Shown piece by piece: positions 10,692-64,000 of a stretch of DNA of 64,000 nt. The first letter of the stretch is position 1; each line of letters opens with the position of its first letter. The stretch is from positions 177,919-241,918 of IMG/VR virus record IMGVR_UViG_3300025770_000870; one strand, given 5' to 3'. Both the position numbers and the translations under genes were made by a program. Under the pieces are notes generated by a model, which was not told the origin of the DNA, did not search any database, and saw only the letters and a program-made list of their open reading frames with translations.

Positions 10692-11057
10692 ATGTACTTA
10701 AATAATAAAGATTTATATGTAGAGATTATCGTATCAAAAGCCCAAGGAAGATTAACCAGATCGGCTGAAAAAATGTTAGAACTTCTAGCTAAAAAAACAA
10801 TCAAAAAAATGAGATACTACTCAAATGACGACAAAATGGATTGTTATCAAAGTGGGTTGTTGGATATGTTCCAAAACTGGTTCAACTTCAATGAGGAAAA
10901 ATCGGTTAATGCCTTCGCATACTTTACAGAAGTCTTCAAGAGAGGTATTGCCAAGGGTTATAATGAACTTTATAAGAAAAAAGGTGATAACGAACACAAA
11001 ATAAAATTAATCTCAATAGAGGGTTCTAATGATGGTCAAGGTATTCACTCTTTGTAA
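10692..11057 (+). CDS. late-transcription sigma factor (T4 gp55-like, short)
   Basis: MYLNNKDLY start and NFNEEKSVNAFAYFT match gp55 blocks YVNNKEL and NF.PEK..N.FAYFT. Confidence 0.8.
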   Translation: MYLNNKDLYVEIIVSKAQGRLTRSAEKMLELLAKKTIKKMRYYSNDDKMDCYQSGLLDMFQNWFNFNEEKSVNAFAYFTEVFKRGIAKGYNELYKKKGDNEHKIKLISIEGSNDGQGIHSL

Positions 11058-11143
11058 TAAGTCATCAAAGGTATTCACATGTTTGGTCGGATCTCCGAAT
11101 TTGAGAGAAACCAAATAAGAAAACAGAAAATAAATAAGATACT

Positions 11144-11178
11144 AAAAAACCCACTCAAATAAATGAGTGGGTTTTTTT
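11144..11178. terminator. bidirectional intrinsic terminator
   Basis: AAAAAACCCACTCA-aataaa-TGAGTGGGTTTTTTT between convergent genes. Confidence 0.85.
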
Positions 11179-15608: not shown

Positions 15609-17306
15609 ATGCCATCATATAATAACTTTAACGGAGCAGCAGGAGCAGATTCTAACTTCGCTGCTAGTAATTCAGCAGTTGAGAATAAAGGACTATTTAG
15701 TCGTATTCTAAGAAACCTTTCAAATTATGGTATGAACTATGATGATATGATCATCAGAAATCAAGTTGGTATCGGTATAAATGAGGATCCATATTCAGCT
15801 AGAGGTAATTCGATGTATGATTTCTTTAGTCAGAGAGCTGTGGCTTCTGTTTTGAATAGAAAGTCAATACCTTATCTAGATAAAGCATATGGTGATAAGA
15901 GAAGAATACTTAGAGAGTATTCTATTAAGGATGAAATAAGAGATTTTGTGAGTACTATATCGGATGAGTCTATTGTTTTTAATGATGATGTTGCCTTTTG
16001 CTCACCTAAATCACTATCAAATGAATATCCACAAGAAGTAAGAGATAAGTATCAAGAATATTTCGAAAAAATATACAATAAGTATGGATTTTCTGATGGT
16101 ATTAGTGCTTGGGATATGATGAGAGATTTCCTTATTGATGGTTATATAGCTATTGAGATTATATATGATGATAAGAAAAAGAATATTGTTGGTTTCAATA
16201 GAATGAGACCAGAAACTTTAGTACCTGCTTATGAACCAGCTATTGGACACTTATGGATACAATTTCCAGAGGATCCACAATTAAGGAGAATATTTTTAGA
16301 TTCACAAATAGTTTATATATCATATTCAACACAGAATGATTATTCAGAAACTTCTTATGTTGAAGGTTTGATAAAACCATATAATCAATTAAAAATATTA
16401 GAACAAACTAGAATAATGTTCAATGTTATAAACGCTACTCTTTATCAAAAATTTACAATTCCTATTAAAGGATTGTCTAGACAAAGAGCAGAAGAACAAA
16501 TAGGTCAGTTAATACATGATTATTCAGAAGAAGTTGAGTGGGATGATAGTCTAGGAACACTTACTATCAATGGTGCTAAGCACTTACCTTACAATAAACA
16601 AATATGGTTTCCTGAGGGAGATGCTGGTACTCCTAATATGGAGATGGTTTCACCAGAAGGTCATGATTTGAATGATGAAACTATGTTATCTTGGTTTTAT
16701 AAGTCTCTTAAAAGAGCTTCTAAGATACCTATATCTAGATTCGAAGGTGAAAATGGTGGTGGTAACCTTTTTGGTGACGCTTCTGAGATGACTAGAGATG
16801 AGATTAAATTTCACAATTTTATTAGTAGATTAAGAGCTAACTTTAAAGAACTTATTGTTAAGCCACTTAAATTACAAATGTTAATTGAGTTTCCTGAATT
16901 AACAGAGGATGAGGTATTTACTAATAGAGTTGATATTGACTTCTATACTAATCAAATATTTGAAGATTGGAAGAAGATAAATAACTTAGCTAAGAAATCA
17001 GAAATAGTTGGAACTTTATTAGGTGTTATGAGAACAGATGAAAAACCTTATTTTCACATTGAGTGGATAATGGATAATATATTCAAGCTTACTCCAGAGG
17101 AGAAAGCTGAGAATGACAGGTATTGGGCTCGTGATGCTGGTGAAGGTGTTGGTTCTGGTGAAGAAGGCGCTGAAGGCGGAGATGATGGAGGCGACTTTGG
17201 TGAATCTGGTGATGTTGGTGGTGTAGATGATGCTGGTGGTGGAGATGATGGTGGAGATGCTGGTGGAGATGCTGGTGGAGATGACGGTGGAGAATTTGAA
17301 TTCTAA
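15609..17306 (+). CDS. portal protein (T4 gp20-like) with Gly/Asp-rich tail
   Basis: FLIDG, SYVEGLIKPYNQLKILE, ITRDE-like MTRDEIKFHNFISRLR; late promoter upstream. Confidence 0.92.
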   Translation: MPSYNNFNGAAGADSNFAASNSAVENKGLFSRILRNLSNYGMNYDDMIIRNQVGIGINEDPYSARGNSMYDFFSQRAVASVLNRKSIPYLDKAYGDKRRILREYSIKDEIRDFVSTISDESIVFNDDVAFCSPKSLSNEYPQEVRDKYQEYFEKIYNKYGFSDGISAWDMMRDFLIDGYIAIEIIYDDKKKNIVGFNRMRPETLVPAYEPAIGHLWIQFPEDPQLRRIFLDSQIVYISYSTQNDYSETSYVEGLIKPYNQLKILEQTRIMFNVINATLYQKFTIPIKGLSRQRAEEQIGQLIHDYSEEVEWDDSLGTLTINGAKHLPYNKQIWFPEGDAGTPNMEMVSPEGHDLNDETMLSWFYKSLKRASKIPISRFEGENGGGNLFGDASEMTRDEIKFHNFISRLRANFKELIVKPLKLQMLIEFPELTEDEVFTNRVDIDFYTNQIFEDWKKINNLAKKSEIVGTLLGVMRTDEKPYFHIEWIMDNIFKLTPEEKAENDRYWARDAGEGVGSGEEGAEGGDDGGDFGESGDVGGVDDAGGGDDGGDAGGDAGGDDGGEFEF

Positions 17307-20294: not shown

Positions 20295-22436
20295 ATGAAA
20301 CCGGTTTTAATAGTAGAAAATTCACAAAACCAACTTATTAGAGAGAGTAACTCTGCTAATAAGGGGTACACATTAGGTGGTACATTCACCGAATTCGGTG
20401 TCAAGAACAGAAATGAACGTATTTATTCGGCTGATAAATTTTTACCAGCATTGAATGAAATGAATGAACGTATAAGTGGCTTAGGTGCTGTTTATGGTGA
20501 ATTCGATCATCCAGACGTTTTTGACACATCACTCTCAAGAGCCTCGCATATTATCACAAAGGCAAGTTATATCCAAGAGAAAAATATCGTAGCGGGAGAG
20601 ATTAAATTACTAAGTACTTACTGGGGTAAGGAAGCAAAAGCACTTGTCGATGACGGGTGTCCTGTATTCGTTTCTTCAAGAGCTGCTGGTATTACTGAAT
20701 CTGATGGTTCAGTTTCCCTTAAAAAATTATTTACTTATGACATTGTTGCTGACCCAGGATTTGCGTCAGCTAAAATGGATGTTAAGGTACTTAATGAGTC
20801 ATTGGGATATAATGACGAAAAATCTAACTTTAGGATATATGAAATGTCCGATGAGTCAAAAATAAATGAGTTATTCAATATGAACAAAAATGAGTTTGTA
20901 ACAAAAAAACAATTGACTGACTACTCTAACTACTTAGTTAACGAATTAGCATCAACTAAGAAGACAGTTAATACAGCCATTACTAAAGGTAATGTAGCTC
21001 CAAAGAAATTGGAACAATTATTAGAGTATTATGAAGAGTTAAACAACTCTAATTCAAAAGTAGCTAAGTATCTTGATTATTTATCAGAAAAGGTACAAAT
21101 AGTAGTTAATGAGAATAAATCATTAAAGAAGACAACTGAGAAATTAGTTAAACATAATGATTATTTAGCAGAAAACTTAGAGAAATCTATTAATTACGCT
21201 GAGTATTTAGGTGAAAACTTAGATAAGAACATTGATTATTCTGAGTATTTAGCTGAGAATTTAGACAAGAACATATCTTATGCTGAGTATTTAGCTGAGA
21301 ATGTTGATAAAAACATTTCATATTCTGAGTATTTAGCTGAGAGTTTAGATAAGAACATTGCTTATTCTGAATATATCGCTGAGAATTTAGACAAAAACAT
21401 CGCTTATTCTGAGTATATCGCTGAGAATTTAGACAAAAACATTGCTTACTCTGAGTATATCGCAGAAAACGTTGATAATAATATCGCTTATTCTGAATAC
21501 TTATCTGAGCATGTTGAAGGTAACATTGCTTACTCTGAGTATATCGCAGAACATTTAGATGATAACATCGCTTATTCTGAGTATGTAGCAGAGAATCTTG
21601 ACAAATCAATTAATTATCAAGGATTGATAGTTGAGAGATTAAACGGAGATAAATTATTTGAATCTGTTGAAGGATCTGAAAGCTTCCCATCTCTAGACGA
21701 TGCTGGTTTTGAAGCTTTTGATGATGAAGAAAACAAAGATGAAGAAAATTGTAATCTTGAAGTATCATTAGATAATAATGATGAAGAAAATGGTGTTGAA
21801 GAATCTGTTGAGAATACAGATGATTACGCAACAGAAGAAAACAAAGATGAAGAAAATAAAGATGAAGAAAACAAAGAAGATAAAACTGAAAGCCATGATA
21901 TGGTAAACGGTGATAGTGATTCTGAATTATCTGAATCTATTGATAAACTAATTGAAGAAGCTAAAAAACGAAAAGTTTCTGAAACAACAGATGTGAATTT
22001 CTTGAAGTTCATGTCTAAATCACAAGTTGACAGCTTTTACGCTTTGTCAAATGACGAACAAGAGTCAGTTAAAGTCCATATAAACGAAAGAGACTACTTT
22101 ACTCAAAAAGATGTTTTGTTATTGATATCTGAAGCACTATCAACTAAGAACGAATCTCTTGAAGAGAGAATAATCAGATTGATGCCTGAAAACACAAAGC
22201 CAATCTGGGAACAATTAAACGACACTTCTAAGAAATCTATCTTGTCACAAGCTAGATTATATCCAGAAGACGTTTTAACTACTGAGGCACAAGTTGAACA
22301 TTTTTGGTCAACTAGAAAGCTAAAGACAAATGAGTCTGTAACAAAGAAACTTGTATCACATGAAAGCCTTATCCAAGAAGATAAACTTTCAGATAATGAT
22401 GTTCAAGCGATAATGGAAAGATTCAAAAATATTTAA
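20295..22436 (+). CDS. prohead protease (gp21-like) fused to a scaffold/core domain
   Basis: KNRNERIY, YGEFDHP, SHII, VSSRAAG, DIVADPG; then 14-aa repeats and an acidic region. Confidence 0.9.
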   Translation: MKPVLIVENSQNQLIRESNSANKGYTLGGTFTEFGVKNRNERIYSADKFLPALNEMNERISGLGAVYGEFDHPDVFDTSLSRASHIITKASYIQEKNIVAGEIKLLSTYWGKEAKALVDDGCPVFVSSRAAGITESDGSVSLKKLFTYDIVADPGFASAKMDVKVLNESLGYNDEKSNFRIYEMSDESKINELFNMNKNEFVTKKQLTDYSNYLVNELASTKKTVNTAITKGNVAPKKLEQLLEYYEELNNSNSKVAKYLDYLSEKVQIVVNENKSLKKTTEKLVKHNDYLAENLEKSINYAEYLGENLDKNIDYSEYLAENLDKNISYAEYLAENVDKNISYSEYLAESLDKNIAYSEYIAENLDKNIAYSEYIAENLDKNIAYSEYIAENVDNNIAYSEYLSEHVEGNIAYSEYIAEHLDDNIAYSEYVAENLDKSINYQGLIVERLNGDKLFESVEGSESFPSLDDAGFEAFDDEENKDEENCNLEVSLDNNDEENGVEESVENTDDYATEENKDEENKDEENKEDKTESHDMVNGDSDSELSESIDKLIEEAKKRKVSETTDVNFLKFMSKSQVDSFYALSNDEQESVKVHINERDYFTQKDVLLLISEALSTKNESLEERIIRLMPENTKPIWEQLNDTSKKSILSQARLYPEDVLTTEAQVEHFWSTRKLKTNESVTKKLVSHESLIQEDKLSDNDVQAIMERFKNI
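21174..21635 (+). repeat. 11 x 42-bp in-frame tandem repeat (NLDKNIAYSEYIAE consensus)
   Basis: units counted in the translation from NLEKSINYAEYLGE to NLDKSINYQGLIVE. Confidence 0.9.
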
Positions 22437-22521: not shown

Positions 22522-24252
22522 ATGTCACACATTAGAATAGACAAACAAAAAGCTATGAAGAAATGGTCTCCAGTATTAGAGAACATGGGAGTTGCTGGTG
22601 AAGATAGATTGGATTGGATGTCAGAATATGCTGAATTTCACTCAATCAATGAAAACGCTTACGCAAACGCTTCAAACGTATCGGGTATGGGAGCTGTAGT
22701 AGCTGCACAACCTAATTCATTAGCTGGTAACACAATTGGCAATTACGCTGACTCAACTGGTTCAGGTGATGTTGGTCAAAACCTTTTACCGGTAGCGATG
22801 AAAATAGCAGCTCAAACAATCGGTTTAGATTTAGTAGCTGTTAAACCTTCTCCAGGTCCAAAAATTGATTTATTATATATCGACTTTAGATATGATGATG
22901 CTCATTTAGGAGATTCAGACGAAAGACCACAAGTCTTTAAGATTGCACCAAACGCTACATTTTTAACTACTGGTGCTGGTGGTATGACAGCAGTTATCGC
23001 TGGATTAAGAGCTCAATTAGCTACGAATACAATCACTGAAACAGTTGGTGGTTTAACTGGTAGAATGTGGAATGATATCACAGATGGTTCAGATGTAGTT
23101 GTAGAACCAACACCTTCAAAAGAAGGAAAAGTTGAATTTTTAGGATTCTCTAGAATTGATGGTTATCCAATGTTCAGAGCTTACAGACAGATGAATACAT
23201 CTCACACAGATGTTGGTTCAGCTCAAGCAAACTGGGGATTTGACCCGACTAGAAACACATTTAGTCCTACAATGTCAATGGCTTCTCAAATTACTGATTT
23301 AGGAGATGTTACTTTAACTGATGAGCCTACTATTGAATTAGTATCAGCTCTTGAAGATCACATTCCTGGTTTCTCTGCAAACTGGATGTCGGATGCTACT
23401 GGCCCTGCTGGTAACTATCCAATGGATAGAGAAATGGACGATAAAAGATACTCTGGTATCATCGGACCAAAAATTAGTTCTAAAACAGTTGCCGTAGGTA
23501 CTATTGAAGTATCTTCAGCTCTTAGAAGAACTGAAATTGAAGATATCAAAGCTAACACTGGTATGGATATCGTTCAAAAAATGGAGTCAATTCTTGTTAA
23601 TGAATTATCTCAAACAATCTCTAAGCAAATTGTTGCTAAGATATTTGAAATGGGTTCACTTAACAGATTATCTGCACCAGCTTATGTTGGAACAGCACCG
23701 GCACCATTAGCGGGACAAACAATCTTTGACTTAAACACAGCTTATGCAACTGTTGCTGCTGGTAATGGAAACGTTGGTGGTGAAACTACACACGCTGTTC
23801 AAAGAAAGCTTGTAACTAAGATAGCTCACGCTTCTAACTACATCGCTACAGAGGGACGTGTTGGTCCAGCTCAATACCTTATTACAAATGGGGGATTAGC
23901 AGCAGCACTTTCTGATATCTCTGGTTATACAATTAACCCAGTGAAATCAAAAATCAATGGTCAAGGTCAATTATACCCAGTAGGTTCAATTGGAGATATT
24001 TCAATATATGTTGATCCATATATGAGATATAACGACAATAGAATTGCTCTTGGTAGAAAGAACAATCCAGATCAACCAGGTATTATTTTTGTACCTTACT
24101 TAATGGCTCAGTCTATATCTGTAATTTCTGAAGCGACTTTCGCTCCTAGAATGTTACTAAGATCTAGATACGCTGTAACAGAAGTTGGTTGGTTCCCACA
24201 AAAACAATTTATGACTATCGAAGTTACAGATGTGAATACACTTCTTAACTAA
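22522..24252 (+). CDS. major capsid protein (T4 gp23-like)
   Basis: KKWSPVLE start, QTIGLDLVAVKP, IFVPY, TFAPRMLLRSRYAV; lies downstream of protease/scaffold. Confidence 0.92.
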   Translation: MSHIRIDKQKAMKKWSPVLENMGVAGEDRLDWMSEYAEFHSINENAYANASNVSGMGAVVAAQPNSLAGNTIGNYADSTGSGDVGQNLLPVAMKIAAQTIGLDLVAVKPSPGPKIDLLYIDFRYDDAHLGDSDERPQVFKIAPNATFLTTGAGGMTAVIAGLRAQLATNTITETVGGLTGRMWNDITDGSDVVVEPTPSKEGKVEFLGFSRIDGYPMFRAYRQMNTSHTDVGSAQANWGFDPTRNTFSPTMSMASQITDLGDVTLTDEPTIELVSALEDHIPGFSANWMSDATGPAGNYPMDREMDDKRYSGIIGPKISSKTVAVGTIEVSSALRRTEIEDIKANTGMDIVQKMESILVNELSQTISKQIVAKIFEMGSLNRLSAPAYVGTAPAPLAGQTIFDLNTAYATVAAGNGNVGGETTHAVQRKLVTKIAHASNYIATEGRVGPAQYLITNGGLAAALSDISGYTINPVKSKINGQGQLYPVGSIGDISIYVDPYMRYNDNRIALGRKNNPDQPGIIFVPYLMAQSISVISEATFAPRMLLRSRYAVTEVGWFPQKQFMTIEVTDVNTLLN

Positions 24253-27755: not shown

Positions 27756-28727
27756 ATGTCTGTTATTAGCTATTTTGGTGGCAAGTCCTCAAAGGTCTTC
27801 CATCAGTTCATCAACACAAGAATACCAAAAGATGGTATCAAAACTTATGTAGAACCATTCTCAGGTGCAATGGGAACGTATATGGATGACCCAAATCTTA
27901 AATTCGATACAGTTGTTTATAATGATAAGAACCGCCACCAGGTGAACTTATATAAGTGTTGTCAAAATCCAACAGAAATGTTGATACATATAGATAATCT
28001 AAAGAGTGGTTTATTACACACAACAGAAACGGATCCAATAAAAAATTGGGATTTTTATAAAGCTATTTATAAGACATTTCAAAAGAATGATTTCTTAGAT
28101 GATATGGATTTTGAGATTGGGGATTATGAAAAAGCTGCTATGTATGCTTTCTTAATTACATCAGCTCATAATTCAGTTTATCCAAGAGGAGCAGGGTTTA
28201 ATGGTTATAAGAAGAATAATGGCAAACTTAAAATAGAAGCACTTGTTAATAAACTAAAGAAGGGTAAGTACACAGAGAAATTGGAATCAATTACTGAGTT
28301 CTATAATATTGATTTTGAGGAATTGATAAACAAATATGATTCAGTAGATACATTTCTTTACTTAGACCCACCTTACGCTAGATTTGACGAGGCTAAAGGA
28401 ATGGATGATGCTAGGAGACTATTCTGGTATGGATGTGATGATGAAGGTGTCTTTGGACCCGAATCACATAGAAGGTTATTAGAAATGCTTAAAAAGACTG
28501 ATTGTAGATGGTCATTATCTTATTATTACTTTCCTTTATTAGAAGAATTATTACCAAGAGACCAATATAACTGGGTTGAGAAAGAAGTATTTAGAAGTTC
28601 TGCTCATGGTGGTAACAATTCGGATAATAAAAAGGTACAAGCTAAAGGTGTTGAGATGCTTATTATGAATTATAATCCAGAAACGGGAGAAAAAATCACT
28701 AATAAGGATGTCGAATGTGAACTTTAA
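27756..28727 (+). CDS. DNA adenine methyltransferase (Dam/D12 class)
   Basis: YFGGKS, YVEPFSGA, YNDKN, LYLDPPY. Confidence 0.9.
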   Translation: MSVISYFGGKSSKVFHQFINTRIPKDGIKTYVEPFSGAMGTYMDDPNLKFDTVVYNDKNRHQVNLYKCCQNPTEMLIHIDNLKSGLLHTTETDPIKNWDFYKAIYKTFQKNDFLDDMDFEIGDYEKAAMYAFLITSAHNSVYPRGAGFNGYKKNNGKLKIEALVNKLKKGKYTEKLESITEFYNIDFEELINKYDSVDTFLYLDPPYARFDEAKGMDDARRLFWYGCDDEGVFGPESHRRLLEMLKKTDCRWSLSYYYFPLLEELLPRDQYNWVEKEVFRSSAHGGNNSDNKKVQAKGVEMLIMNYNPETGEKITNKDVECEL

Positions 28728-29460
28728 GATTGTTGATATTTTCGAGAGTGTTAAGGATGATATTTTTTCAATTCAACCATATTTATCTATTAATAATAAT
28801 CTAAAAAATTTCACTACTAATACATTTAGTTTATCAATTCCGATGGAATTGGATGGGTTTGGTGTTGATACTGATGCTGAGATGATAAGTCTTATTAGGA
28901 TTGAGATGAATCAAAGTATTTATAAAACAATTTTGAAAGAATTATTCAATACTTCAAAATTTGATTATATAGATATTTCTAAAACTGTTAATACTCACCA
29001 ATCTGTTAATGATATTATTGATTTTTTATCTATTGATTGTATAGATAAAAAATATAAGTATTTAGTTACGAATACTTCTATGGCTAATTCAATAGGTGAT
29101 AGTTCATTATTTAACTTTAAACCAAGTGCATCGGTTGTAGAATCTCAAGGTTTACCATATTTATTTGGGTCTTTGATTAAATATGATGTTTATATAGATC
29201 CTTTTATGAAATTTGATGATAATAGAATTTGCTTATTTGATTCTTGTGAGATTAATATAGAGAATATAAATCAAACTGTTACATCAGCGGCCACATTTGC
29301 ACCTAAGATGATGATAAGTTATGATGTGGCTTTTAAAATAGCAGACTCTAAGGTTATATTTGTTTTAGATGGTAATGAATCAAGTAGTTCTTATAAGCAA
29401 TATAAACAATTACAGCGTGATATAAAAATAAATTCTTTATTAGATGGCTCAACAGATTAA
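28708..29460 (+). CDS. truncated major-capsid paralog with C-terminal RDIKINSLL motif
   Basis: YDVYIDPFMKFDDNRICL and AATFAPKMMI align with ISIYVDPYMRYNDNRIAL and EATFAPRMLL of the 22522 capsid. Confidence 0.75.
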   Translation: MSNVNFKIVDIFESVKDDIFSIQPYLSINNNLKNFTTNTFSLSIPMELDGFGVDTDAEMISLIRIEMNQSIYKTILKELFNTSKFDYIDISKTVNTHQSVNDIIDFLSIDCIDKKYKYLVTNTSMANSIGDSSLFNFKPSASVVESQGLPYLFGSLIKYDVYIDPFMKFDDNRICLFDSCEINIENINQTVTSAATFAPKMMISYDVAFKIADSKVIFVLDGNESSSSYKQYKQLQRDIKINSLLDGSTD

Positions 29461-43580: not shown

Positions 43581-43659
43581 AAAAAACTTTTATTTCCAAA
43601 GTATATATAAAAACTGGATACGTCTTCTTAATATATACATGTACAAATAATACATTATT

Positions 43660-44109
43660 ATGGGATTTAAAAAGTTAGTTAATTACTACGTATTACGCAA
43701 ATCTTTAAAAGAAATCGAGATGAATAGAATTTTAGAAAAAATATACAAGAAAATAAAAATTTCTACTAAAGAAAAGAAATTTTTGGATTTATATAATCGT
43801 ACTACCGAAGAGGTTGCTAAGGATTTGATGTTCTTGTCTAAAAATGCAACTTCTAGAAAGGTTAAAGAAATATTAGAAAGAGGTAAGAAAGTCATTTGTG
43901 ATTTACATGATAGGGATGGTAAAATTGGACTTGAGATACTTAGTATTGAGAATAATGTCGATTCTGTTACATGTGATGTTATTATGAGAAATGAGACACA
44001 TCAATTACATGATAGATTTTTATATAATATTATTTATAATAATATAAAAAAAGAGTATTCATTACAAGAACAAGACGAATATTATGAAAAAATAGAAGCT
44101 ACGAAATGA
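43660..44109 (+). CDS. hypothetical protein
   Basis: EMNRILEKIYKKIKISTKEKKFLD helix motif near the N-terminus. Confidence 0.65.
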   Translation: MGFKKLVNYYVLRKSLKEIEMNRILEKIYKKIKISTKEKKFLDLYNRTTEEVAKDLMFLSKNATSRKVKEILERGKKVICDLHDRDGKIGLEILSIENNVDSVTCDVIMRNETHQLHDRFLYNIIYNNIKKEYSLQEQDEYYEKIEATK

Positions 44110-44378
44110 TAAAGAAATTTAAACAATTTAATGAAGAAATATCTGGTACTGAATTGGTTGGTCCTATTGGTCCTGCTTATGGTGAGACGGGGTTACAGAA
44201 TAAAACCATAAATTCACATGACACAAATGTTATTTATTCAGAGATGGATTCTAAGATATATACAATAGATGAATATAATGATATTTATGGTGAGTACCTT
44301 AAATTTGGTGGATCTCCGTTAGATGGATTTACAAAAGAAAATATAGATATAATATTGGATTTTTTACAAACTAATTAA
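44106..44378 (+). CDS. small protein with CTS-like N-terminus
   Basis: MIKKFKQFNEE. Confidence 0.7.
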   Translation: MIKKFKQFNEEISGTELVGPIGPAYGETGLQNKTINSHDTNVIYSEMDSKIYTIDEYNDIYGEYLKFGGSPLDGFTKENIDIILDFLQTN

Positions 44379-44423
44379 TTTAATTTATATATACATTTTG
44401 ATAAAAAACAGAAATCAAAATTT

Positions 44424-45752
44424 ATGAGCAAGTTAGTAACATTAAACGGGTTAAATGATGAAGAAATATTAAATGATATATTCATCGATGAGATAATTGT
44501 CCTTGAAGATATACAGGGAAGTAAAATATGGGTTAATTGGGATGGTAAGCATTTTAATATCAAACCTAAATCTATATCAAATGAGTCAATAAATCTAATT
44601 GACTTAGCAATGCAAAATTATTATAATCCGGCTATCAATTATTTAAATTCATTAGATGATAGAACAAAAAGCCTTTTAAATAAAAAATGGTGGTTTTGTT
44701 TCGAGTATTTTCCTGATGAGCAACCTGCTAATATAGAGTATAATAGAGTTCCTAAGAATAATCTTGTTCTTACAGCTATTTCTAAGTCTAGAAAATATGA
44801 ATTTACTATTGAAGAGTTAGATGAGTATTCTAGATTATTTAATGTTGATGTGGTGCCGGTTATATATCAAGGTACTTTGACCGAAAGTATGAAAGAAGCG
44901 ATAAAGTATTTTATTAATACTAGTGAGGATGATTTAGAGTATATTTTTGGTGAAAAGTCATTTGCATTCTTCTTTTATGGAATATTAAACCCATCAGTTA
45001 ATAACTCTTTCTTAATGGATAATGAATTCCAAAATAATGTTGAGAAACTTATTATTAAGAGTAAAACAAAGGATATTTCATTTCAGTTATTAAATCCTTT
45101 ATATAAAAGGTTGAGTGATGATAATCATACAGACTTTGTTGAGATTTATACATTAATATTAATTAATTTCTTGAATTTTTCTCAATCTATTAATTTAGAA
45201 GATATTAAATTGAAAGGTGATAGAAAAGATGAAGTTTACATATATTTAGTTTCTAAAATATTCAATGTTTATATATCGGAGGTCAAACAAGATTTACTTG
45301 ACTTTGACTTTGTTGTTCCTGAATTCTTTGATAAGGATAAATTTAAGATAAATATTGAATTGATTAGTAATAAATTAACAAAGGATTATATAAAAGAGAG
45401 TGATAAATTAGAATATATTTTTAAGGTTATTCTTGGATCTTTCAACAAGAAAAGAAAGAAACCAATTGGTATATTCACTGAGAATACAGTTAAGTTATTT
45501 AATAAATTTGTAGTTGATATCGATGATTATATCGATACTTATTTAGGAAAACTACATGAAATTGAATTAGGTAGATCTGGTCTACTAGATTTCGGTGACT
45601 TCTTTGATATTCAATATGATACTGATGGAGAGGGTGAAGTTTATCCAGATGTTTACTCAGAGTTTTCTAAGACTGGTGGTCAGAACAAGAAGAAGAAAAA
45701 AGGTAAGGGTGGTAAATTCCCAATTGATCCAGGTAAAATTCCATTTAAATAA
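44424..45752 (+). CDS. RNA-ligase-fold protein lacking the catalytic Lys
   Basis: LEDIQGSK in place of EKxDGxN, FCFEYF (motif III-like), VVPVIYQG. Confidence 0.5.
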   Translation: MSKLVTLNGLNDEEILNDIFIDEIIVLEDIQGSKIWVNWDGKHFNIKPKSISNESINLIDLAMQNYYNPAINYLNSLDDRTKSLLNKKWWFCFEYFPDEQPANIEYNRVPKNNLVLTAISKSRKYEFTIEELDEYSRLFNVDVVPVIYQGTLTESMKEAIKYFINTSEDDLEYIFGEKSFAFFFYGILNPSVNNSFLMDNEFQNNVEKLIIKSKTKDISFQLLNPLYKRLSDDNHTDFVEIYTLILINFLNFSQSINLEDIKLKGDRKDEVYIYLVSKIFNVYISEVKQDLLDFDFVVPEFFDKDKFKINIELISNKLTKDYIKESDKLEYIFKVILGSFNKKRKKPIGIFTENTVKLFNKFVVDIDDYIDTYLGKLHEIELGRSGLLDFGDFFDIQYDTDGEGEVYPDVYSEFSKTGGQNKKKKKGKGGKFPIDPGKIPFK

Positions 45753-45943
45753 TGATTGATATTAAAATGACCTCTGTCGAGGTAAAGGCCGAAGTACGCG
45801 AACTAAAATGTAAATATACTCGTGAAATGGCTAAGGATATACACTATTATAGTGGTTTAGATCCTTTTAGTATGGATAATAGAAGAACAACAAGAAAAGA
45901 TTCGATTAATAATATTTTTAATATAACAAAACATGATAAATAA
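45752..45943 (+). CDS. 63-aa gp23-capsid-like fragment with RKDSINNIF motif
   Basis: SVEVKAEVRELKCKYTREMAKDIHYYSGLD resembles the gp23 block V.AKSR.LKAEYT.ELAQDL.A.HG.D. Confidence 0.6.
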   Translation: MIDIKMTSVEVKAEVRELKCKYTREMAKDIHYYSGLDPFSMDNRRTTRKDSINNIFNITKHDK

Positions 45944-47195
45944 TCCGCCTATAAAGAATATGAAGGTATCAAAAAAATTATCCAGTACGGATTCTTCCAA
46001 AAATATAGTTGAAAAGCTAAACAAGAAAACTTTCCTATTACAATACTTACCATCCGTTTTAGAATACTTAGAATCAGAAAAATACATAAATTATAAAAAT
46101 GAAAAGTTAAAAACAGCTTACTTGATCGATATCATACATAATATGGTATTAAAATATTATTTCAAGAAAGAGAATAAATTTGTTATAAATGCAACTATAT
46201 TGAAAGATAAGTATGGATATCTTTATAATTATTATATCAATTATCTAATTGAGACCAAGATAATAAGTATGGTTTCTAATTATAGGAAAGGTGTATCTTC
46301 TCGTAAATATTCACTAAATGCTAAAATCATCAAATCAAAGATTCAAAGAAGATATAGAAACAAAGATAAAGTCTTATTGAAGAAATATAAAAAGAAAGTA
46401 ATGGATAGCATTGACTTCTCTGATAATGATGATTATTTGATAGGTAAAGATATCCGAGAGAAATTAATATCTGACCTTTTTTCCGTTGAGATTCAATTCG
46501 ATAGAGCTATATTTTTCCTGGATGCATTAAAAGATGAAAAATATGATGTCTATAATAGAAATGTTTATTCTGTTGAGTGTGTTAATGATAAGCATATATT
46601 TTATCACTTTGATAGCTATGGTAGAATGCACACCAATTTCACAATACTTAGATCATTCATTAGAAAGAATTGTTTATTGATAGATGGTGAGGAAACTTGT
46701 GAGATAGATATTAAAAATAGCCAACCATTATTCCTATCTAAATTAATAAAAGATAGTGATACTAAGTGGGTCAAGGAGGAAGAGTTTGAATTATTTAGAG
46801 AACTAACACTTAGTGGTAATTACTACCAATACATGATGAATGTATTGGGTATTAAAAATAGAAACGATGCTAAGGAATTAACATACAAAGTTCTTTTTGG
46901 TAGAAACATTACTAGTAAGGCTGATATTGGATTTAGAAAGGCTTTCCCGACTATACACAATTTTATAAAATTATATAAAAAGGATAATGGTAATTATAAA
47001 ACGATGGCTTATGATTTACAAAAAGCAGAGTCGAATCTTATATTCAATCGAATAATAAGACGTATAATTGTATTATACCCAGAAATAAAAATGATAACGG
47101 TACATGATAGTATTGTTTTTCCTAAAAAATATAAAGACATTATTGATGATATCTTTGAACAAGAACTTGAAAATGAATTCAATTTAACAAAATAA
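45933..47195 (+). CDS. family-A polymerase-like palm/fingers protein with N-terminal wHTH-like region
   Basis: YGRMH, motif A EIDIKNSQP, motif B RNDAKELTYKVLFG, motif C TVHDSIV; no exonuclease domain. Confidence 0.6.
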   Translation: MINNPPIKNMKVSKKLSSTDSSKNIVEKLNKKTFLLQYLPSVLEYLESEKYINYKNEKLKTAYLIDIIHNMVLKYYFKKENKFVINATILKDKYGYLYNYYINYLIETKIISMVSNYRKGVSSRKYSLNAKIIKSKIQRRYRNKDKVLLKKYKKKVMDSIDFSDNDDYLIGKDIREKLISDLFSVEIQFDRAIFFLDALKDEKYDVYNRNVYSVECVNDKHIFYHFDSYGRMHTNFTILRSFIRKNCLLIDGEETCEIDIKNSQPLFLSKLIKDSDTKWVKEEEFELFRELTLSGNYYQYMMNVLGIKNRNDAKELTYKVLFGRNITSKADIGFRKAFPTIHNFIKLYKKDNGNYKTMAYDLQKAESNLIFNRIIRRIIVLYPEIKMITVHDSIVFPKKYKDIIDDIFEQELENEFNLTK

Positions 47196-47382
47196 TATAT
47201 ACAATATGAAAACTTACTATTTAAAATCAAAATTATCAAAAGAGGTTATAAGTAAATCAGTTTTTGAATCATTATCAATAGCTATTGAGTATTTTTCTGA
47301 AGTTAAGAGATTAAACCCTGAAGAACTTCTTAAAATATACATAGTCAATGATAGTGAACTAAAATAGTTAATATATACCTTT

Positions 47383-47922
47383 GTGATTGATTTAACTAAC
47401 CCCAAAATATCATATATTGTGATATCATCTGAAAAGATTGATGATATTATGTCAATTTTGTATGCTAAAAATTATCAAATTATACCGATAAAGGGTTATT
47501 ATCAAGGTCAATATGAGGATTCATTGATGGCTTTTGGTGTTGATAATGATGAGTTAAGAAAAGATTTGATTTTTTTACTTAACCATTTTAGAGAGGATTG
47601 TGGTATAGTTAAATACTTTGGTGAGACCGGTGCTAAGAAAGTGTTCAAAGACGGCTCAGAGAAGCCCTTAGGTATCGTATTGTATAATACAGACTCAGAT
47701 AACATTTCATATTTATATGATGGTATATCGTTCTCTTTTGTTGAACAAGTTAGATATTGGAAACCTAAGAATAAAGAAGATTTTTCTGTTGGTATGTTAG
47801 TTGAATATATGAATAATAATAAGTGGTATGAAAAGGAAGTTATTAATCCATCAGAAGAATACCATAAGCTATATAAGCTTATGATAAAGTATGATAAGAT
47901 TAGAGTAGCTACTACTAACTAA
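47383..47922 (+). CDS. hypothetical protein (possible SAM-lyase/DUF3293-like fold)
   Basis: KGYYQGQYEDSLMAF...FREDCGIV pattern. Confidence 0.4.
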   Translation: MIDLTNPKISYIVISSEKIDDIMSILYAKNYQIIPIKGYYQGQYEDSLMAFGVDNDELRKDLIFLLNHFREDCGIVKYFGETGAKKVFKDGSEKPLGIVLYNTDSDNISYLYDGISFSFVEQVRYWKPKNKEDFSVGMLVEYMNNNKWYEKEVINPSEEYHKLYKLMIKYDKIRVATTN

Positions 47923-48718
47923 TCTCAAACCAAACAATTCGATTCTCGAATGTTGGTGTTTCTTTTATAAAATAAGTTTGATAATTATCTCCGTTATTAA
48001 CATTGTTAACAACATTTAATCCTGTACATCTCTCACCTTTTGGTCTTACTCCGATTACTTTACTTGGATTTATTTTACTTGAGTGTATTACTTGAGCCCC
48101 ATTTATATTACCTATGATGTCATCATAATTATTTGATAAATTAAAATTATATGATGTTGATAATAAGTATTCTACTATATTATCTCCTATAATAAATGCG
48201 GTAGCGGGACCTAAGTTACTTTTCATAGATAAAACATTACTAATAAATGTCATCTTTGTGATTATTCTTCTGGAATCAGCATCTGATTGTTCATTTGTTG
48301 TTAAAAATTTATCATTTTTTAATTTAAGAGTTACGTCTGTGTAAAATTTACATTTTTTCATTGGTTTACTTGTTAAAGTATCCAATGTTGATATAATATC
48401 ATTATATAATAATGCTTCACTTATGAATTTTTTAGCAGTTACATTTTGCGACATCATTCTTGTTGAGAATGTTCCAATTGTATCCAACCCATCATAAATA
48501 CCTTGCGGTAACCAATCCATATCATCATATTCTTCTTGTTTTTCAGCAAGAACAGAATTTATAGATGATTGTCTATGTCTTCTTTTGAGTTCATTCATTA
48601 TCCACTCATCATCAGATGATAAAGTATCCGTATAATAAATAACACCCTTGGGTAAAGAGGGTTTATTATTTTCTGTGTAATTACATATCAATTTTATATT
48701 AGACAGCAAGGTGCTCAT
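47915..48718 (-). CDS. degenerate major-capsid paralog fragment with RHRQSSINSVL motif
   Basis: RRIITKMTFISNVLSMKSNLGPATAFII aligns with capsid RKLVTKIAHASNYIATEGRVGPAQYLIT. Confidence 0.6.
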   Translation of the reverse strand: MSTLLSNIKLICNYTENNKPSLPKGVIYYTDTLSSDDEWIMNELKRRHRQSSINSVLAEKQEEYDDMDWLPQGIYDGLDTIGTFSTRMMSQNVTAKKFISEALLYNDIISTLDTLTSKPMKKCKFYTDVTLKLKNDKFLTTNEQSDADSRRIITKMTFISNVLSMKSNLGPATAFIIGDNIVEYLLSTSYNFNLSNNYDDIIGNINGAQVIHSSKINPSKVIGVRPKGERCTGLNVVNNVNNGDNYQTYFIKETPTFENRIVWFEIS

Positions 48719-49571: not shown

Positions 49572-49976
49572 ATGGATAAAAAAGTAGGAAGATTTGAAAA
49601 AATATTTTTTCCTGAACTAAATATAAAAGTGGATTCTAAAATAGACACTGGTGCTTATAGCGTTTCTTTACACGTTGAGGATATCAACGAAGTGGATGGT
49701 AAATTATACTTCTGGGTTGGTGATGAATCTAATAAATTCATATATGATGATTTTAATATTATTAGTGTTAAGAGTTCTTTTGGTAAAAATCAAAAAAGAT
49801 ATTCTATAAAATTGAAGATGCATCTGGGTAAACTTACCTATGATGTTTTCGTATCACTGAGTGATAGAAAAAAAATGAAGTTTCCTTGTTTGATAGGTAG
49901 AAAATTTCTACATAAACACGGATTTTTGGTAGATGTGAGAAAAAAGAATTTACATGATAGAAATAAAAAAATGTAA
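49572..49976 (+). CDS. RimK-associated putative ATP-dependent zinc/aspartic protease
   Basis: SKIDTGAYSVSLH and LSDRKKMKFPCLIGRKFL. Confidence 0.88.
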   Translation: MDKKVGRFEKIFFPELNIKVDSKIDTGAYSVSLHVEDINEVDGKLYFWVGDESNKFIYDDFNIISVKSSFGKNQKRYSIKLKMHLGKLTYDVFVSLSDRKKMKFPCLIGRKFLHKHGFLVDVRKKNLHDRNKKM

Positions 49977-50493
49977 TTATTTTACTGGTGATAATAGCAT
50001 CTCTGATGGTATTAAAGATATTGTTAATTTTTTAGAATTATCAGGCAGAAATTATTTGCTATTAACTCCACCTAAAAATAGTGACATTGATAAATCAACA
50101 CAAACAAATACAATAAAATATTATTTGGATAATCAATTACACTTTAATAACTTTGTTGAGTTTGTTGATATTATAGAAAATGAAGGCAATTTATTTAGGG
50201 TTGATTTGTTGGTTTTGGATTTTTGGCATTTAACACCTATTGAGATATCTATTTGGAAAAAAGAAATTGATAAATTGGGATTAGACCATTTGATAATAGC
50301 TAAAGAATATCACTATAAATCTACTGATGATGTTACAGACTATCATCTTAGAAGAGAGTATAAAACGGTTGGTAAAAATGAATTATTTATAACTGATAAT
50401 ATAAATAAATGGACATCAACTTTAGAATCTTTAATAAAATCTTATAGAAGAGATAAGAAAATCAATGATATATTTGGTGGAACTGATAATTAG
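49954..50493 (+). CDS. degenerate RecA/DnaB-like fold protein with RDKKINDIF motif
   Basis: Walker-B-like VDLLVLD without an intact Walker A; shared C-terminal motif. Confidence 0.5.
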   Translation: MIEIKKCNYFTGDNSISDGIKDIVNFLELSGRNYLLLTPPKNSDIDKSTQTNTIKYYLDNQLHFNNFVEFVDIIENEGNLFRVDLLVLDFWHLTPIEISIWKKEIDKLGLDHLIIAKEYHYKSTDDVTDYHLRREYKTVGKNELFITDNINKWTSTLESLIKSYRRDKKINDIFGGTDN

Positions 50494-63829: not shown

Positions 63830-64000
63830 ATGATTAAAAAGAAAGATGAAGAATTCGATGATGAGTTGAATGATGAAATAAATGATGATGATAAATTAGA
63901 CATCGTTGAAGAGTCGGGTGATGCTGAAGAGTCGGGTGATGCTGAAGAGTCGGGTGATGCTGAAGAGTCGGGTGATGCTGATAAGAAGAAAGAGGGAGAT
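63830..64000 (+). CDS. partial acidic protein (runs off the window end)
   Basis: MIKKKDEEFDDELNDEINDDDKLDIVEESGDA... open to position 64000. Confidence 0.6.
   Translation, partial: MIKKKDEEFDDELNDEINDDDKLDIVEESGDAEESGDAEESGDAEESGDADKKKEGD
63908..63979 (+). repeat. 4 x 18-bp perfect in-frame tandem repeat (EESGDA)
   Basis: GAAGAGTCGGGTGATGCT repeated four times. Confidence 0.95.

What the first reader, a model, noticed from the sequence alone, without database searches (positions are those of the whole stretch)
45752..45943. 63-aa peptide matching the most conserved gp23 segment, apparently from a different phage lineage
TSVEVKAEVRELKCKYTREMAKDIHYYSGLD resembles the canonical T4-like gp23 block (TV.AKSR.LKAEYT.ELAQDL.A.HG.D) more than this phage's own version (KTVAVGTIEVSSALRRTEIEDIKANTGMD). 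It is followed directly by the RKDSINNIF tag. Inference: this is a minimal epitope mimic captured from another phage. From recall, the T4 Gol peptide that activates Lit lies in a different, more N-terminal part of gp23, so any sensor here would be a different one.
Basis: partly seen in the sequence, partly recalled or inferred. Interest (0 to 1): 0.72.

Follow-up and report, generated by a model that had tools for sequence, protein, structure and literature searches.

The report
Tagged capsid-fragment gene in huge phage
A conserved 63-codon gene of a marine huge phage encodes a copy of one subunit-contact piece of the T4-type major capsid protein joined to a short C-terminal tag that about sixty other proteins of these phages also carry, several of them pieces of head proteins too; what these tagged fragments do is unknown, and I found no description of anything like them.

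Summary
The ORF at 45752-45943 is real and conserved. It belongs to a family of about 100 clusters of 41-90-aa proteins, found at the same gene position in relatives of the 634-642 kb Mahaphage genomes. Residues 1-37 are homologous to gp23: Pfam Gp23 is hit by 15 of 17 members, best E 1.6e-8, and the family profile finds full-length capsid proteins at E 1e-6 in 1.8 billion proteins. The segment equals T4 gp23 259-292, which is I-domain linker 2 plus the short P-domain helix and holds the T4 head-length mutations. It is not the Gol region.

The "RKDSINNIF tag" is also real. The motif R-[KD]-x-[KS]-I-x-x-[IL]-[FL] lies within 10 residues of the stop in 59 of 74 and 43 of 68 occurrences in two complete relatives (reversed control: 3 of 11 and 3 of 8). 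Tagged ORFs include other pieces of the capsid protein and of the protease-scaffold.

The gene evolves fast (dN/dS 0.3-0.8, flanks 0.04-0.17). Function is unknown. My best guess, at 0.35, is a head-directed docking protein. Decoy, anti-competitor and clamp-binding readings stay open.

The parts
45752..45943 (+). The small gene: 63 codons plus TAA. Its ATG overlaps the TAA of the upstream gene, and its last 11 bases overlap the start of the downstream gene.
   Evidence: Intact orthologs at the same gene position in L001, L002, L004-L009. About 100 clusters of small homologs.
45758..45862 (+). gp23-like module, residues 3-37. It equals T4 gp23 about 251-285: I-domain linker 2 / P-domain strand plus the short P-domain helix.
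   Evidence: Pfam and PHROG matches. Profile against PDB: T4 gp23 259-292. Profile against full-length capsid proteins. AF2: residues 1-23 extended, helix 24-34. Roles in T4 and head-length mutations A268V, A275T, D285V, D287V/N from PMC9546572.
45863..45892 (+). Variable linker, residues 38-47. It takes in-frame insertions and deletions and most of the substitutions in the family.
   Evidence: Alignments A1 and A4; DNA alignment A6.
45893..45919 (+). C-terminal tag RKDSINNIF, residues 48-56, followed by NITKHDK and the stop.
   Evidence: Family consensus R...RK.SI.KIF. Genome-wide C-terminal enrichment of the motif.
28708..29460 (+). Second tagged capsid-derived gene in the window: a 250-aa own-type paralog of the capsid protein's C-terminal half, ending ..QRDIKINSLLDGSTD.
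   Evidence: BLASTP to own capsid protein 439-546, 30% identity, E 3e-15. Weak Pfam Gp23. Tag hit 5 residues from the stop.
49954..50493 (+). Third tagged ORF: 179 aa, no recognisable family, ends ..RRDKKINDIFGGTDN.
   Evidence: No family or Atlas lead.
11079..11162 (+). Fourth tagged ORF: 27 codons, ..RNQIRKQKINKILKNPLK, just after the gp55-like late sigma gene. The 53-aa ortholog in LR745206.1 carries a weak match to the prohead protease motif DLVADPGF.
22522..24252 (+). The phage's own major capsid protein (576 aa, Mahaphage type). Its homologous segment lies at residues 313-349.
20295..22436 (+). Prohead protease fused to a repeat-rich scaffold (713 aa). It is the parent of two tagged fragments in LR745206.1.
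   Evidence: PHROG 207 E 1.6e-30. Repeats NLDKNI.YSEY. Tagged 83-aa ORF matches the repeats at E 1e-37.
47915..48718 (-). Miniature HK97-fold protein (267 aa), untagged, 2 kb downstream on the other strand. Its N-terminal motif resembles the T4-type capsid protein.
   Evidence: AF2 pLDDT 79.5, pTM 0.77. Foldseek: top matches are T4 gp23/gp24, HK97 and other phage capsid proteins, 155 matches at E <= 1e-3. BLASTP hints.
44424..45752 (+). Upstream gene in the same gene string: 442 aa, RNA-ligase-like (a lead only).
   Evidence: No Pfam or PHROG hit. Atlas features 0.93-0.96 to RNA_ligase clusters.
45933..47195 (+). Downstream gene, always next to the small gene: 420 aa, family-A polymerase palm-like (a lead only).
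   Evidence: No Pfam or PHROG hit. Atlas features 0.96-0.97 to 'family A palm domain' and 'DNA-directed RNA polymerase' clusters. Adjacency kept even where another gene is inserted upstream.

Best explanation
It is a real accessory gene of a marine Mahaphage-type huge phage, and its 63-aa product has two modules. Residues 1-37 copy the piece of a T4-type major capsid protein that runs from I-domain linker 2 through a P-domain strand into the short P-domain helix. In T4 this piece makes contacts within and between capsomers near the quasi-threefold axes. Residues 48-56 are a C-terminal tag shared by roughly sixty ORFs per complete genome of this clade. Those ORFs include other pieces of the capsid protein and of the protease-scaffold.

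My reading is that the tag is an address, a docking peptide for one common receptor. The receptor is most likely the assembling head (capsid protein interior or scaffold), as with scaffold C-termini and cargo-loading peptides. The capsid-like module, which cannot fold alone, would lie against an HK97-fold protein where the same piece of a neighbouring subunit would lie. The protein would then add to, tune or block lattice contacts.

Shown: the two modules, the homology, the T4 mapping, conservation as a coding gene, and the tag's statistics and its carriers. Inferred: that the tag docks, where it docks, and the effect on assembly.
For: Coding and conserved: intact ORF at the same gene position in nine loci; about 100 small-protein clusters; insertions and deletions stay in frame; synonymous sites differ freely in distant relatives; dN/dS is 0.28-0.46 in several distant pairs.

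Homology to gp23 and mapping to T4 259-292. That T4 stretch is an interface element and holds the head-length mutations (PMC9546572).

AF2 gives an extended N-terminal 23 residues and two helices at pLDDT 76, a shape that needs a partner.

Tag: 30 of 33 strict hits lie within 10 residues of the stop in LR745206.1, 20 of 29 in LR756502.1, and 4 of 4 in the own contig. With the relaxed motif the counts are 59 of 74, 43 of 68 and 7 of 9. The reversed motif gives 1-2 strict hits and 8-11 relaxed hits, 3 of them near a stop.

The identifiable N-terminal parts of tagged ORFs are all head proteins: capsid-protein spine helix (E 7e-6; PHROG 138 E 2.5e-4); capsid-protein C-terminus (E 2e-7; own capsid protein 2.5e-5); an own-type copy of the same segment as the finding (E 1.7e-4); scaffold repeats (E 1e-37); protease motif (weak, E 0.04-0.07); a 250-aa own-type capsid paralog in the window (E 3e-15).

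Giant phage heads are known to hold more than 50 gene products, many of them packaged (PMC10052503, abstract).
Against: The gene is not in the head module. It sits 21 kb away in a gene string with an RNA-ligase-like and a polymerase-like gene.

It evolves 5-7 times faster than its flanks (dN 0.155 against 0.021-0.030; dN/dS 0.74 for the closest pair).

Tagged ORFs come and go between relatives. The window's 27-codon copy has lost its N-terminal part, and a natural deletion variant, P0014, exists. That pattern fits a conflict gene better than an assembly factor.

Its segment is of the T4 type, not the phage's own type, which is odd for a partner of its own capsid protein.

The only complex I could fold, with the 267-aa mini HK97 protein, gave no answer.

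No RNA contig covers the ORF. No receptor for the tag is identified.
Confidence: 0.35

Rival explanations
1. Decoy for a host sensor or chaperone that recognises conserved capsid-protein segments. The fragment occupies the sensor, and the shared tag gives all such baits a common fate, for example hand-over to a protease or sequestration.
For: Capsid proteins are established triggers of bacterial immunity: Gol/Lit (PMC3014915), CmdTAC sensing newly made Gp23 through a chaperone (PMC11618068), and CapRel (PMC9712102, listed). The small gene keeps exactly the residues that T4-type capsid proteins conserve. It evolves fast and is patchily distributed. It lies among non-structural genes.
Against: Known capsid-derived peptides switch their sensors on rather than block them; the Gol peptide alone suffices. 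The phage's own capsid protein no longer carries the T4-type motif, so it would not need shielding at that epitope. Own-type fragments and scaffold repeats are tagged too. No defence-related neighbour or partner was found.
Confidence: 0.2
2. Weapon against co-infecting T4-type phages: a dominant-negative fragment that enters the rival's capsid lattice or scaffold at an inter-capsomer contact and spoils assembly. The huge phage's own, diverged capsid protein would be immune.
For: The best-matching full-length proteins (36-45 bits) belong to a T4-like group whose nearest cultured members infect Flavobacterium, Rhodothermus and Microcystis. The first two are Bacteroidota by my knowledge of the taxonomy, the predicted host phylum of Mahaphages (PMC7162821). 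The own clade scores 6.5 bits or less. The segment is the one where T4 point mutations change head geometry. Satellites that redirect helper capsids with capsid-like or scaffold-like proteins are a precedent (from my knowledge: P4 Sid, SaPI CpmB, PICI Ccm).
Against: Tagged fragments of the phage's own type, including near-identical scaffold repeats at E 1e-37, would hit the phage itself. There is no evidence of co-infection or timing. The role of the tag is unexplained.
Confidence: 0.15
3. The tag is a sliding-clamp-binding epitope like the C-termini of T4 gp43, gp55 and gp33. Tagged proteins, this one included, are tethered to clamps on DNA.
For: The motif sits at the extreme C-terminus and has hydrophobic residues at i, i+3 and i+4, often with acidic neighbours, as described for the T4 epitopes (PMC2988020). 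The split family-B polymerase ends ..RRLSVVMDIFGGFK, and a tagged 78-aa ORF follows it. A tagged ORF follows the gp55-like gene.
Against: About sixty clamp ligands per genome is implausible. The N-terminal parts that can be identified are head proteins, not DNA enzymes. The ORF next to gp55 matches the protease rather than gp55. No gp45-like clamp was found with PF02916 (weak evidence).
Confidence: 0.08
4. A decaying remnant of a second capsid gene, or a chance open frame, with no function.
For: High dN/dS in some pairs (0.63-0.81) and a deletion variant. No transcript evidence over the ORF.
Against: An intact ORF with start, stop and both modules is kept in about 100 clusters that have diverged to 30-40% identity. 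Insertions and deletions stay in frame. dN/dS is 0.28-0.46 in several distant pairs. The gene position is conserved.
Confidence: 0.04

Closest known systems
Gol peptide of T4 gp23 (activator of the Lit protease of prophage e14)
   Same: A short stretch of a T4-type major capsid protein that could act on its own as a recognised peptide.
   Different: Gol is part of the capsid gene itself and lies in its first quarter (PMC3014915). This is a separate gene, maps to T4 259-292, carries a tag, and has no known sensor.
Capsid targeting sequence of T4 internal proteins; C-terminal coat-binding ends of scaffolding proteins; encapsulin cargo-loading peptides
   Same: A short terminal peptide shared by many unrelated, mostly small proteins of one virus or compartment. 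HK97-fold shell proteins are at hand.
   Different: From my knowledge, the T4 sequence is N-terminal and is cut off by the prohead protease, and encapsulin peptides have another consensus. No packaging or binding has been shown here. The cargo here includes pieces of the shell and scaffold themselves, which none of those systems has.
Capsid-redirecting proteins of phage satellites (P4 Sid, SaPI CpmA/CpmB, PICI Ccm, PLE TcaP)
   Same: Small or capsid-like proteins that act on another element's HK97 capsid lattice or scaffold.
   Different: Those are whole folded proteins encoded by satellites. This is a 35-residue piece of a capsid protein with a tag, encoded by a huge phage. No target is known.
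Sliding-clamp-binding C-terminal epitopes of T4 gp43, gp55 and gp33
   Same: A short hydrophobic motif at the extreme C-terminus that is interchangeable between proteins (PMC2988020).
   Different: Three carriers in T4 against about sixty here. The carriers here are head-protein pieces and proteins with no recognisable family. No clamp was identified.
Donor-strand complementation in chaperone-usher pilus assembly
   Same: A strand supplied in trans to an incomplete or interface-exposed beta-sheet. This is the kind of contact I propose for the extended N-terminal module.
   Different: An analogy only, with no homology and no evidence of such a complex here.

Membership tests
Major capsid protein Gp23 (Pfam PF07068), as a capsid protein | Sequence match above the curated cut-off | tested here: not met
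   The window copy scores 22.1 bits against a cut-off of 24.4. The best relative reaches E 1.6e-8, and 15 of 17 match at E <= 0.1. It is homologous to a piece of gp23 but is not a member as a capsid protein.
Major capsid protein Gp23 (Pfam PF07068), as a capsid protein | Complete HK97 fold (N-arm, E-loop or linkers, P and A domains) | tested here: not met
   Sixty-three residues cover model positions 135-169 of 376. AF2 gives one extended stretch and two helices.
Gol-type peptide (Lit activator) | Lies in the Gol region, in the first quarter of gp23 | tested here: not met
   Aligns to T4 gp23 259-292 of 521. The position of Gol comes from PMC3014915.
Gol-type peptide (Lit activator) | Binds EF-Tu and allows cleavage by Lit | not testable with these tools
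   Needs biochemistry.
Terminal targeting or cargo-loading peptide (T4 capsid targeting sequence, scaffold C-terminus, encapsulin peptide) | A short terminal motif shared by many otherwise unrelated proteins of one genome | tested here: met
   59 of 74, 43 of 68 and 7 of 9 motif hits lie within 10 residues of a stop in three genomes. The reversed motif gives 11, 8 and 1 hits in all, of which 3, 3 and 1 lie within 10 residues of a stop.
Terminal targeting or cargo-loading peptide (T4 capsid targeting sequence, scaffold C-terminus, encapsulin peptide) | Binds the shell or scaffold, and carriers are found inside the particle | tested here: inconclusive
   The only fold attempted, small protein plus the 267-aa mini HK97 protein, gave 'no answer'. 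No proteomic data exist.
Terminal targeting or cargo-loading peptide (T4 capsid targeting sequence, scaffold C-terminus, encapsulin peptide) | N-terminal position and removal by the prohead protease (T4 type) | tested here: not met
   The motif is C-terminal. Cleavage was not testable.
Sliding-clamp-binding epitope (T4 gp43/gp55/gp33 type) | Short hydrophobic, often acidic, motif at the extreme C-terminus | tested here: met
   R-[KD]-x-K-I-x-x-[IL]-[FL], 0-10 residues from the stop, with acidic variants such as RD.KIDDIL. Described for T4 in PMC2988020.
Sliding-clamp-binding epitope (T4 gp43/gp55/gp33 type) | Carried by the replicative polymerase and the late sigma factor; a clamp is encoded | tested here: inconclusive
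   The polymerase ends ..VMDIFGGFK, similar but outside the motif. The gp55-like gene ends at TAA TAA without the tag. PF02916 finds no clamp.
Exon or split piece of the capsid gene (intron, intein or broken gene) | The capsid gene lacks this segment, or the piece lacks its own start and stop | tested here: not met
   The own capsid gene is intact and has its own copy of the segment at residues 313-349. The small ORF has a conserved ATG and TAA.

The most novel reading that the evidence does not exclude
Huge phages of this clade run a proteome-wide address system. A nine-residue C-terminal tag is carried by about sixty proteins per genome, and the phage has used it to deliver loose pieces of its head proteins to one site. 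Those pieces include capsid-protein interface strands, the spine helix, the capsid-protein C-terminus, scaffold repeats and a protease motif. The pieces would act either as trans-acting modulators of giant-capsid geometry or as tagged baits that intercept whatever binds conserved head-protein segments (host sensors or rival phages' assembly proteins). The gene in the finding would be the bait or modulator for the T4-type inter-capsomer contact.
Probability: 0.3. Interest if true: 0.85.

Novelty: categorically new. Interest (0 to 1): 0.75.

Why it matters
If the tag is an address, it gives a handle on which of the hundreds of unknown genes of the largest known phages act together. About sixty per genome can be named at once from sequence alone.

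Conserved genes that encode only an interface piece of a capsid protein, a scaffold repeat or a protease motif are, as far as I could find, undescribed. They would be either a new way to control the geometry of very large capsids or a new class of bait in phage-host or phage-phage conflict. The piece copied here is the stretch where T4 point mutations make petite or giant heads.

Both readings can be tested with ordinary experiments on a cultured relative or by heterologous expression. The tag might also serve as a tool for loading proteins into capsids.

The rating 'categorically new' applies to the architecture: head-protein fragments joined to a shared tag. The mechanism may still prove to be a variant of capsid targeting or of dominant-negative interference.

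Tried and rejected
1. Two-piece capsid protein: the small ORF supplying the strand and short helix that the 267-aa mini HK97 protein lacks. The complex fold gave score 0.00, 'no answer'. This is neither support nor evidence against.

2. The tag as the end of the capsid protein's spine helix. The profile-profile match to the spine helix of the 267-aa family has E 0.11. The alignment to the own capsid protein's ..SKQIVAKIF scores only 3.5 bits. A tagged ORF in LR745206.1 holds a full spine helix and the tag as well. I dropped this as an identity and keep it only as a possible origin.

3. Stop-codon recoding joining the gp55-like gene to the tagged mini-ORF. The stops are TAA TAA.

4. Timing from T4-type late promoters. 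TATAAATA occurs 28 times against 22 +/- 4 by chance, and none lies before the capsid gene. Sigma-70-like sites are at chance level.

5. An RNA element instead of a protein. No Rfam match at E <= 0.1. The GC-rich codons and the small hairpin at 45769-45790 are shared only with the nearest relative.

6. Transcription evidence. Three metatranscriptome runs hold short contigs over 43654-45669 only, none over the ORF, and DNA carry-over cannot be excluded.

7. The tag resembling the capsid protein's own C-terminus (..DVNTLLN). This is not conserved in relatives.

8. Function of tagged ORFs by family search. Nine of ten have no Pfam or PHROG hit, and the Atlas has no lead for the 179-aa one.

9. Direct PDB hit with the single peptide. 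Only a chance sortase match.

10. Prior descriptions. Three literature searches found none.
Full report
WHAT IS THERE

The ORF 45752..45943 (+) exists as described. It has 63 codons and runs from ATG to TAA. Its ATG overlaps the TAA of a 442-codon gene, and its last 11 bases overlap the start of a 420-codon gene.

The window has 26-31% G+C. It is the last 64 kb of a 241,918-bp viral contig from seawater metagenomes, and many runs from 2012 to 2021 hold it.

Its head genes are T4-like: portal 15609..17306, protease-scaffold 20295..22436, and capsid protein 22522..24252. The capsid protein is 78%, 73%, 53% and 52% identical to those of the uncultured phages LR745206.1 (634,780 bp), LR756502.1 (642,428 bp), LR756504.1 and LR756501.1 (735,411 bp), and 30% identical to Lak phages. 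These are the largest phage genomes of the Mahaphage clade, whose predicted hosts are Bacteroidetes (PMC7162821).

IS THE LIKENESS TO GP23 REAL?

Yes. The window copy alone hits Pfam Gp23 at E 1.1e-4. That is 22.1 bits against a cut-off of 24.4, with residues 3-37 on model positions 135-169. It also hits PHROG 138 'major head protein' at E 1.8e-3.

tblastn against 50,697 phage records finds 142 records, and apart from the LR745206.1 ortholog the listed hits fall at one place in the capsid genes of T4-like phages. Fifteen of 17 close relatives hit Pfam Gp23, best E 1.6e-8.

A profile of 14 relatives was searched against 1.84 billion proteins. It finds 157 proteins at E <= 1e-3, among them full-length capsid proteins of 551-643 aa at E 1e-6 to 7e-4.

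Against solved structures the profile aligns to T4 gp23 residues 259-292, IEAKSRQLKAAYSIELAQDLRAVHGMDADAELSG. In T4 this stretch is I-domain linker 2 (the E-loop equivalent, which makes contacts within and between capsomers) running into the P domain and its short, negatively charged helix near the quasi-threefold axes. The head-length mutations A268V, A275T, D285V and D287V/N lie in it (PMC9546572). Gol is elsewhere, in the first quarter of gp23 (PMC3014915).

WHOSE GP23?

The family profile scores 36-45 bits on a group of full-length capsid proteins (P0079, P0100, P0102, P0121, P0131, P0152). It scores 23 bits on Acinetobacter phage ZZ1 and 21 on cyanophage Syn1. On the phage's own capsid protein it scores only 4.9 bits, and 6.5 or less on seven other capsid proteins of its clade, including Lak and Tenacibaculum phage PTm1.

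The best-scoring group is only 21-26% identical to the own capsid protein. Its nearest deposited relatives are LR756508.1, Flavobacterium phage vB_FspM_immuto, Microcystis phage Mel-JY01 and Rhodothermus phage RM378.

Whether that reflects an old transfer or retention from an ancestor cannot be decided from about 45 residues.

A GENE FAMILY, NOT A ONE-OFF

The same small ORF sits between the same neighbours in the following loci:
- LR745206.1 (61 aa) and LR756502.1 (53 aa).
- Three JGI contigs.
- L007.
- L008/L009, where an inserted gene separates it from the upstream gene but not from the downstream one.

About 100 of the hits are small proteins of 41-90 aa, each from its own 50%-identity cluster. 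They share an N-terminal block (M..I.L.MTSVEVKAETR.LR..WTREMA.DL), a variable middle with in-frame insertions and deletions, and a C-terminal R...RK.SI.KIF.

Distant relatives differ freely at synonymous sites. dN/dS falls to 0.28-0.46 in several distant pairs, so the frame is under selection. But the gene evolves much faster than its flanks. For the closest pair dN is 0.155 against 0.021-0.030, and dN/dS is 0.74 against 0.04-0.05.

The more distant Mahaphages LR756501, LR756500, Lak-B5 and PTm1 have no such ORF. LR756504 has a 54-aa relative at another place. One contig carries a natural deletion that fuses the first 28 codons to the next gene (P0014).

AF2 with the family alignment gives residues 1-23 extended and helices at 24-34 and 41-56, with mean pLDDT 76. 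That shape needs a partner.

THE TAG

A Pfam Gp23 scan of the two complete relatives turned up further small frames with other pieces of gp23. Read out, they end in the same motif as the finding.

I therefore counted the strict motif R[KDNRE].[KSRE]I.[NKRD][IL][FL] in all six-frame open segments, and then a relaxed motif with any residue at position 7 and I, L or V at position 8. The table gives hits within 10 residues of the stop out of all hits.

| Genome | Strict motif | Relaxed motif | Reversed strict | Reversed relaxed |
|---|---|---|---|---|
| LR745206.1 | 30 of 33 | 59 of 74 | 0 of 1 | 3 of 11 |
| LR756502.1 | 20 of 29 | 43 of 68 | 1 of 2 | 3 of 8 |
| Own contig | 4 of 4 | 7 of 9 | not counted | 1 of 1 |

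So this is a genuine C-terminal tag on about sixty ORFs per complete genome. There is a basic flavour (RK.KI.KIF) on tiny ORFs and an acidic one (RD.KIDDIL) on proteins of 70-300 aa with no recognisable family. Nine of ten that I tested have no Pfam or PHROG family.

The window holds four tagged ORFs:
- The finding itself.
- 28708..29460, a 250-aa own-type paralog of the capsid protein's C-terminal half (E 3e-15).
- 49954..50493, 179 aa.
- A 27-codon ORF at 11079..11162, next to the gp55-like late sigma gene.

WHAT THE TAGGED TINY ORFS CARRY

With the tag removed, the tagged ORFs of LR745206.1 match head proteins wherever anything can be recognised:
- 222206: the ortholog of the finding. T4-type capsid proteins, E 3e-5.
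- 440158: spine helix. E 7e-6; PHROG 138 E 2.5e-4.
- 255010: capsid-protein C-terminus. E 2e-7 to P0079 and 2.5e-5 to the own capsid protein. An own-type ortholog lies in LR756502.1 at 277261.
- 584537: an own-clade-type copy of the same segment as the finding. E 1.7e-4 to Lak.
- 460435: the repeats of the protease-scaffold. E 1e-37.
- 189479: the protease motif DLVADPGF. Weak, E 0.04 to 0.07.

The finding is thus one member of a set: a piece of a head-morphogenesis protein plus a shared tag.

SURROUNDINGS

The gene string 43660..47922 (+) has no terminator-like site on its strand. The 442-aa protein looks RNA-ligase-like and the 420-aa protein looks like a family-A polymerase palm. Both rest on Atlas features only, because Pfam and PHROGs are silent.

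Two kilobases downstream on the other strand lies a 267-aa protein that AF2 and Foldseek place firmly in the HK97 fold, with T4 gp23/gp24 at the top and 155 matches at E <= 1e-3. It is not tagged.

Short contigs in three metatranscriptome runs cover parts of 43654-45669 but not the small ORF.

HOW IT MAY WORK

Shown: a two-module product, homology of module 1 to an interface piece of the T4-type capsid protein, conservation as a coding gene, and a proteome-wide C-terminal tag whose recognisable carriers are head-protein pieces.

Inferred: I think the tag is a docking peptide for one common receptor, and that the receptor is most likely the assembling head. Three things point that way. Every identifiable carrier derives from head proteins. 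Scaffold C-termini and cargo-loading peptides work like this. And giant phage heads hold more than 50 gene products (PMC10052503). The extended capsid-like module would then lie where the same piece of a neighbouring subunit lies, and would add to, tune or block lattice contacts. I give this reading 0.35.

Several observations speak against it and for a conflict role. The gene lies away from the head module. It evolves fast. Tagged ORFs turn over between relatives. And this fragment is T4-type, not own-type.

A decoy for a capsid-sensing defence (0.2) fits the conserved-epitope logic. But known capsid peptides activate their sensors, and the own capsid protein no longer shows the motif.

A dominant-negative weapon against T4-like phages of the same hosts (0.15) explains the T4 type but not the own-type fragments.

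A clamp-binding epitope (0.08) fits the shape of the motif, the tag-like end of the polymerase, and two gene adjacencies. It does not fit sixty carriers made of head pieces.

A functionless remnant (0.04) is contradicted by the conservation.

COMPARISON AND NOVELTY

It is homologous to a piece of Gp23 but is not a capsid protein. It is not Gol. The tag behaves like a targeting peptide in position and sharing, but binding is untested. I found no paper describing conserved genes made of head-protein fragments with a common tag. I rate the architecture as new and the mechanism as open.

Noticed in passing
window 47915-48718 (-): A 267-aa protein with no family hit is predicted with confidence to have a miniature HK97 capsid fold (T4 gp23/gp24 are the top structural matches). 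Its N-terminus resembles the conserved LIANELVSIQPMSLPSG.LFYLDY motif of T4-type capsid proteins. Its role is unknown; a vertex protein or a shell of its own are possibilities.
   Followed up: partly
window 28708-29460 (+): A 250-aa paralog of the C-terminal half of the phage's own capsid protein (30% identity, E 3e-15) that ends in the shared tag (..QRDIKINSLLDGSTD).
   Followed up: partly
window 45933-47195 (+): A 420-aa protein, always directly downstream of the small gene, looks like a minimal family-A polymerase palm. By eye it has motifs D..NSQ, K..YKVLFG and VHDS. Atlas features score 0.96-0.97 to 'family A palm' and 'DNA-directed RNA polymerase' clusters. Pfam and PHROGs are silent.
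   Followed up: partly
window 44424-45752 (+): A 442-aa protein with Atlas features like RNA ligases (Rnl2 type). By eye the position of the catalytic lysine motif reads EDIQGSK. Not tested further.
   Followed up: partly
window 10692-11162 (+): The gp55-like late sigma gene (PHROG 234, E 1.9e-7) covers only model positions 10-123 of 181 and ends at TAA TAA. A 27-codon tagged ORF follows. In LR745206.1 the corresponding ORF has 53 codons and carries a prohead-protease-like motif.
   Followed up: partly
window 56483-58021 (+) and G000:C1:138514-139773 (-): The family-B DNA polymerase is split into two genes about 96 kb apart. One TGA lies inside the match of the C-terminal part. That part ends ..RRLSVVMDIFGGFK, and a tagged 78-aa ORF follows it.
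   Followed up: partly
LR745206.1 and LR756502.1, whole genomes (loci L036-L100): About sixty ORFs per genome end in R-[KD]-x-[KS]-I-x-x-[ILV]-[FL] within 10 residues of the stop. Most have no recognisable family. One 336-aa carrier has a weak nucleotidyltransferase match.
   Followed up: partly
P0083, P0094, P0097, P0109, P0149, P0162 (L102, L103): Another kind of gp23-fragment protein from metagenomes, 86-120 aa. It has the same strand, helix and spine-helix piece, flanked at both ends by an FKFGRG-like motif. P0094 lies in a cluster of glycosyltransferase, methyltransferase and UDP-galactopyranose mutase genes.
   Followed up: partly
P0090, P0112, P0153 (L101); L010: Proteins of 180-220 aa in which the strand, helix and spine-helix piece comes before the N-terminal gp23 motif (PIARRV..VGVQPL), so the order is permuted. 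In L101 and L010 two gp23-fragment ORFs stand in tandem.
   Followed up: no
window 39756-43580 (-): A 1274-aa protein with many hydrophobic segments and repeated (K)RWAEGVG.AIGAFAPVYE-like units, in the most G+C-rich stretch of the window (34-38%). Possibly a tape-measure or ejection protein. Not examined.
   Followed up: no
window 63896-64000: The contig ends in a tandem repeat. On the minus strand the frame reads ITRLFS four times, which may be why the assembly stops there.
   Followed up: no
P0014 (40-kb JGI contig): A natural variant in which a deletion fuses the first 28 codons of the small gene to the start of the polymerase-like gene.
   Followed up: no
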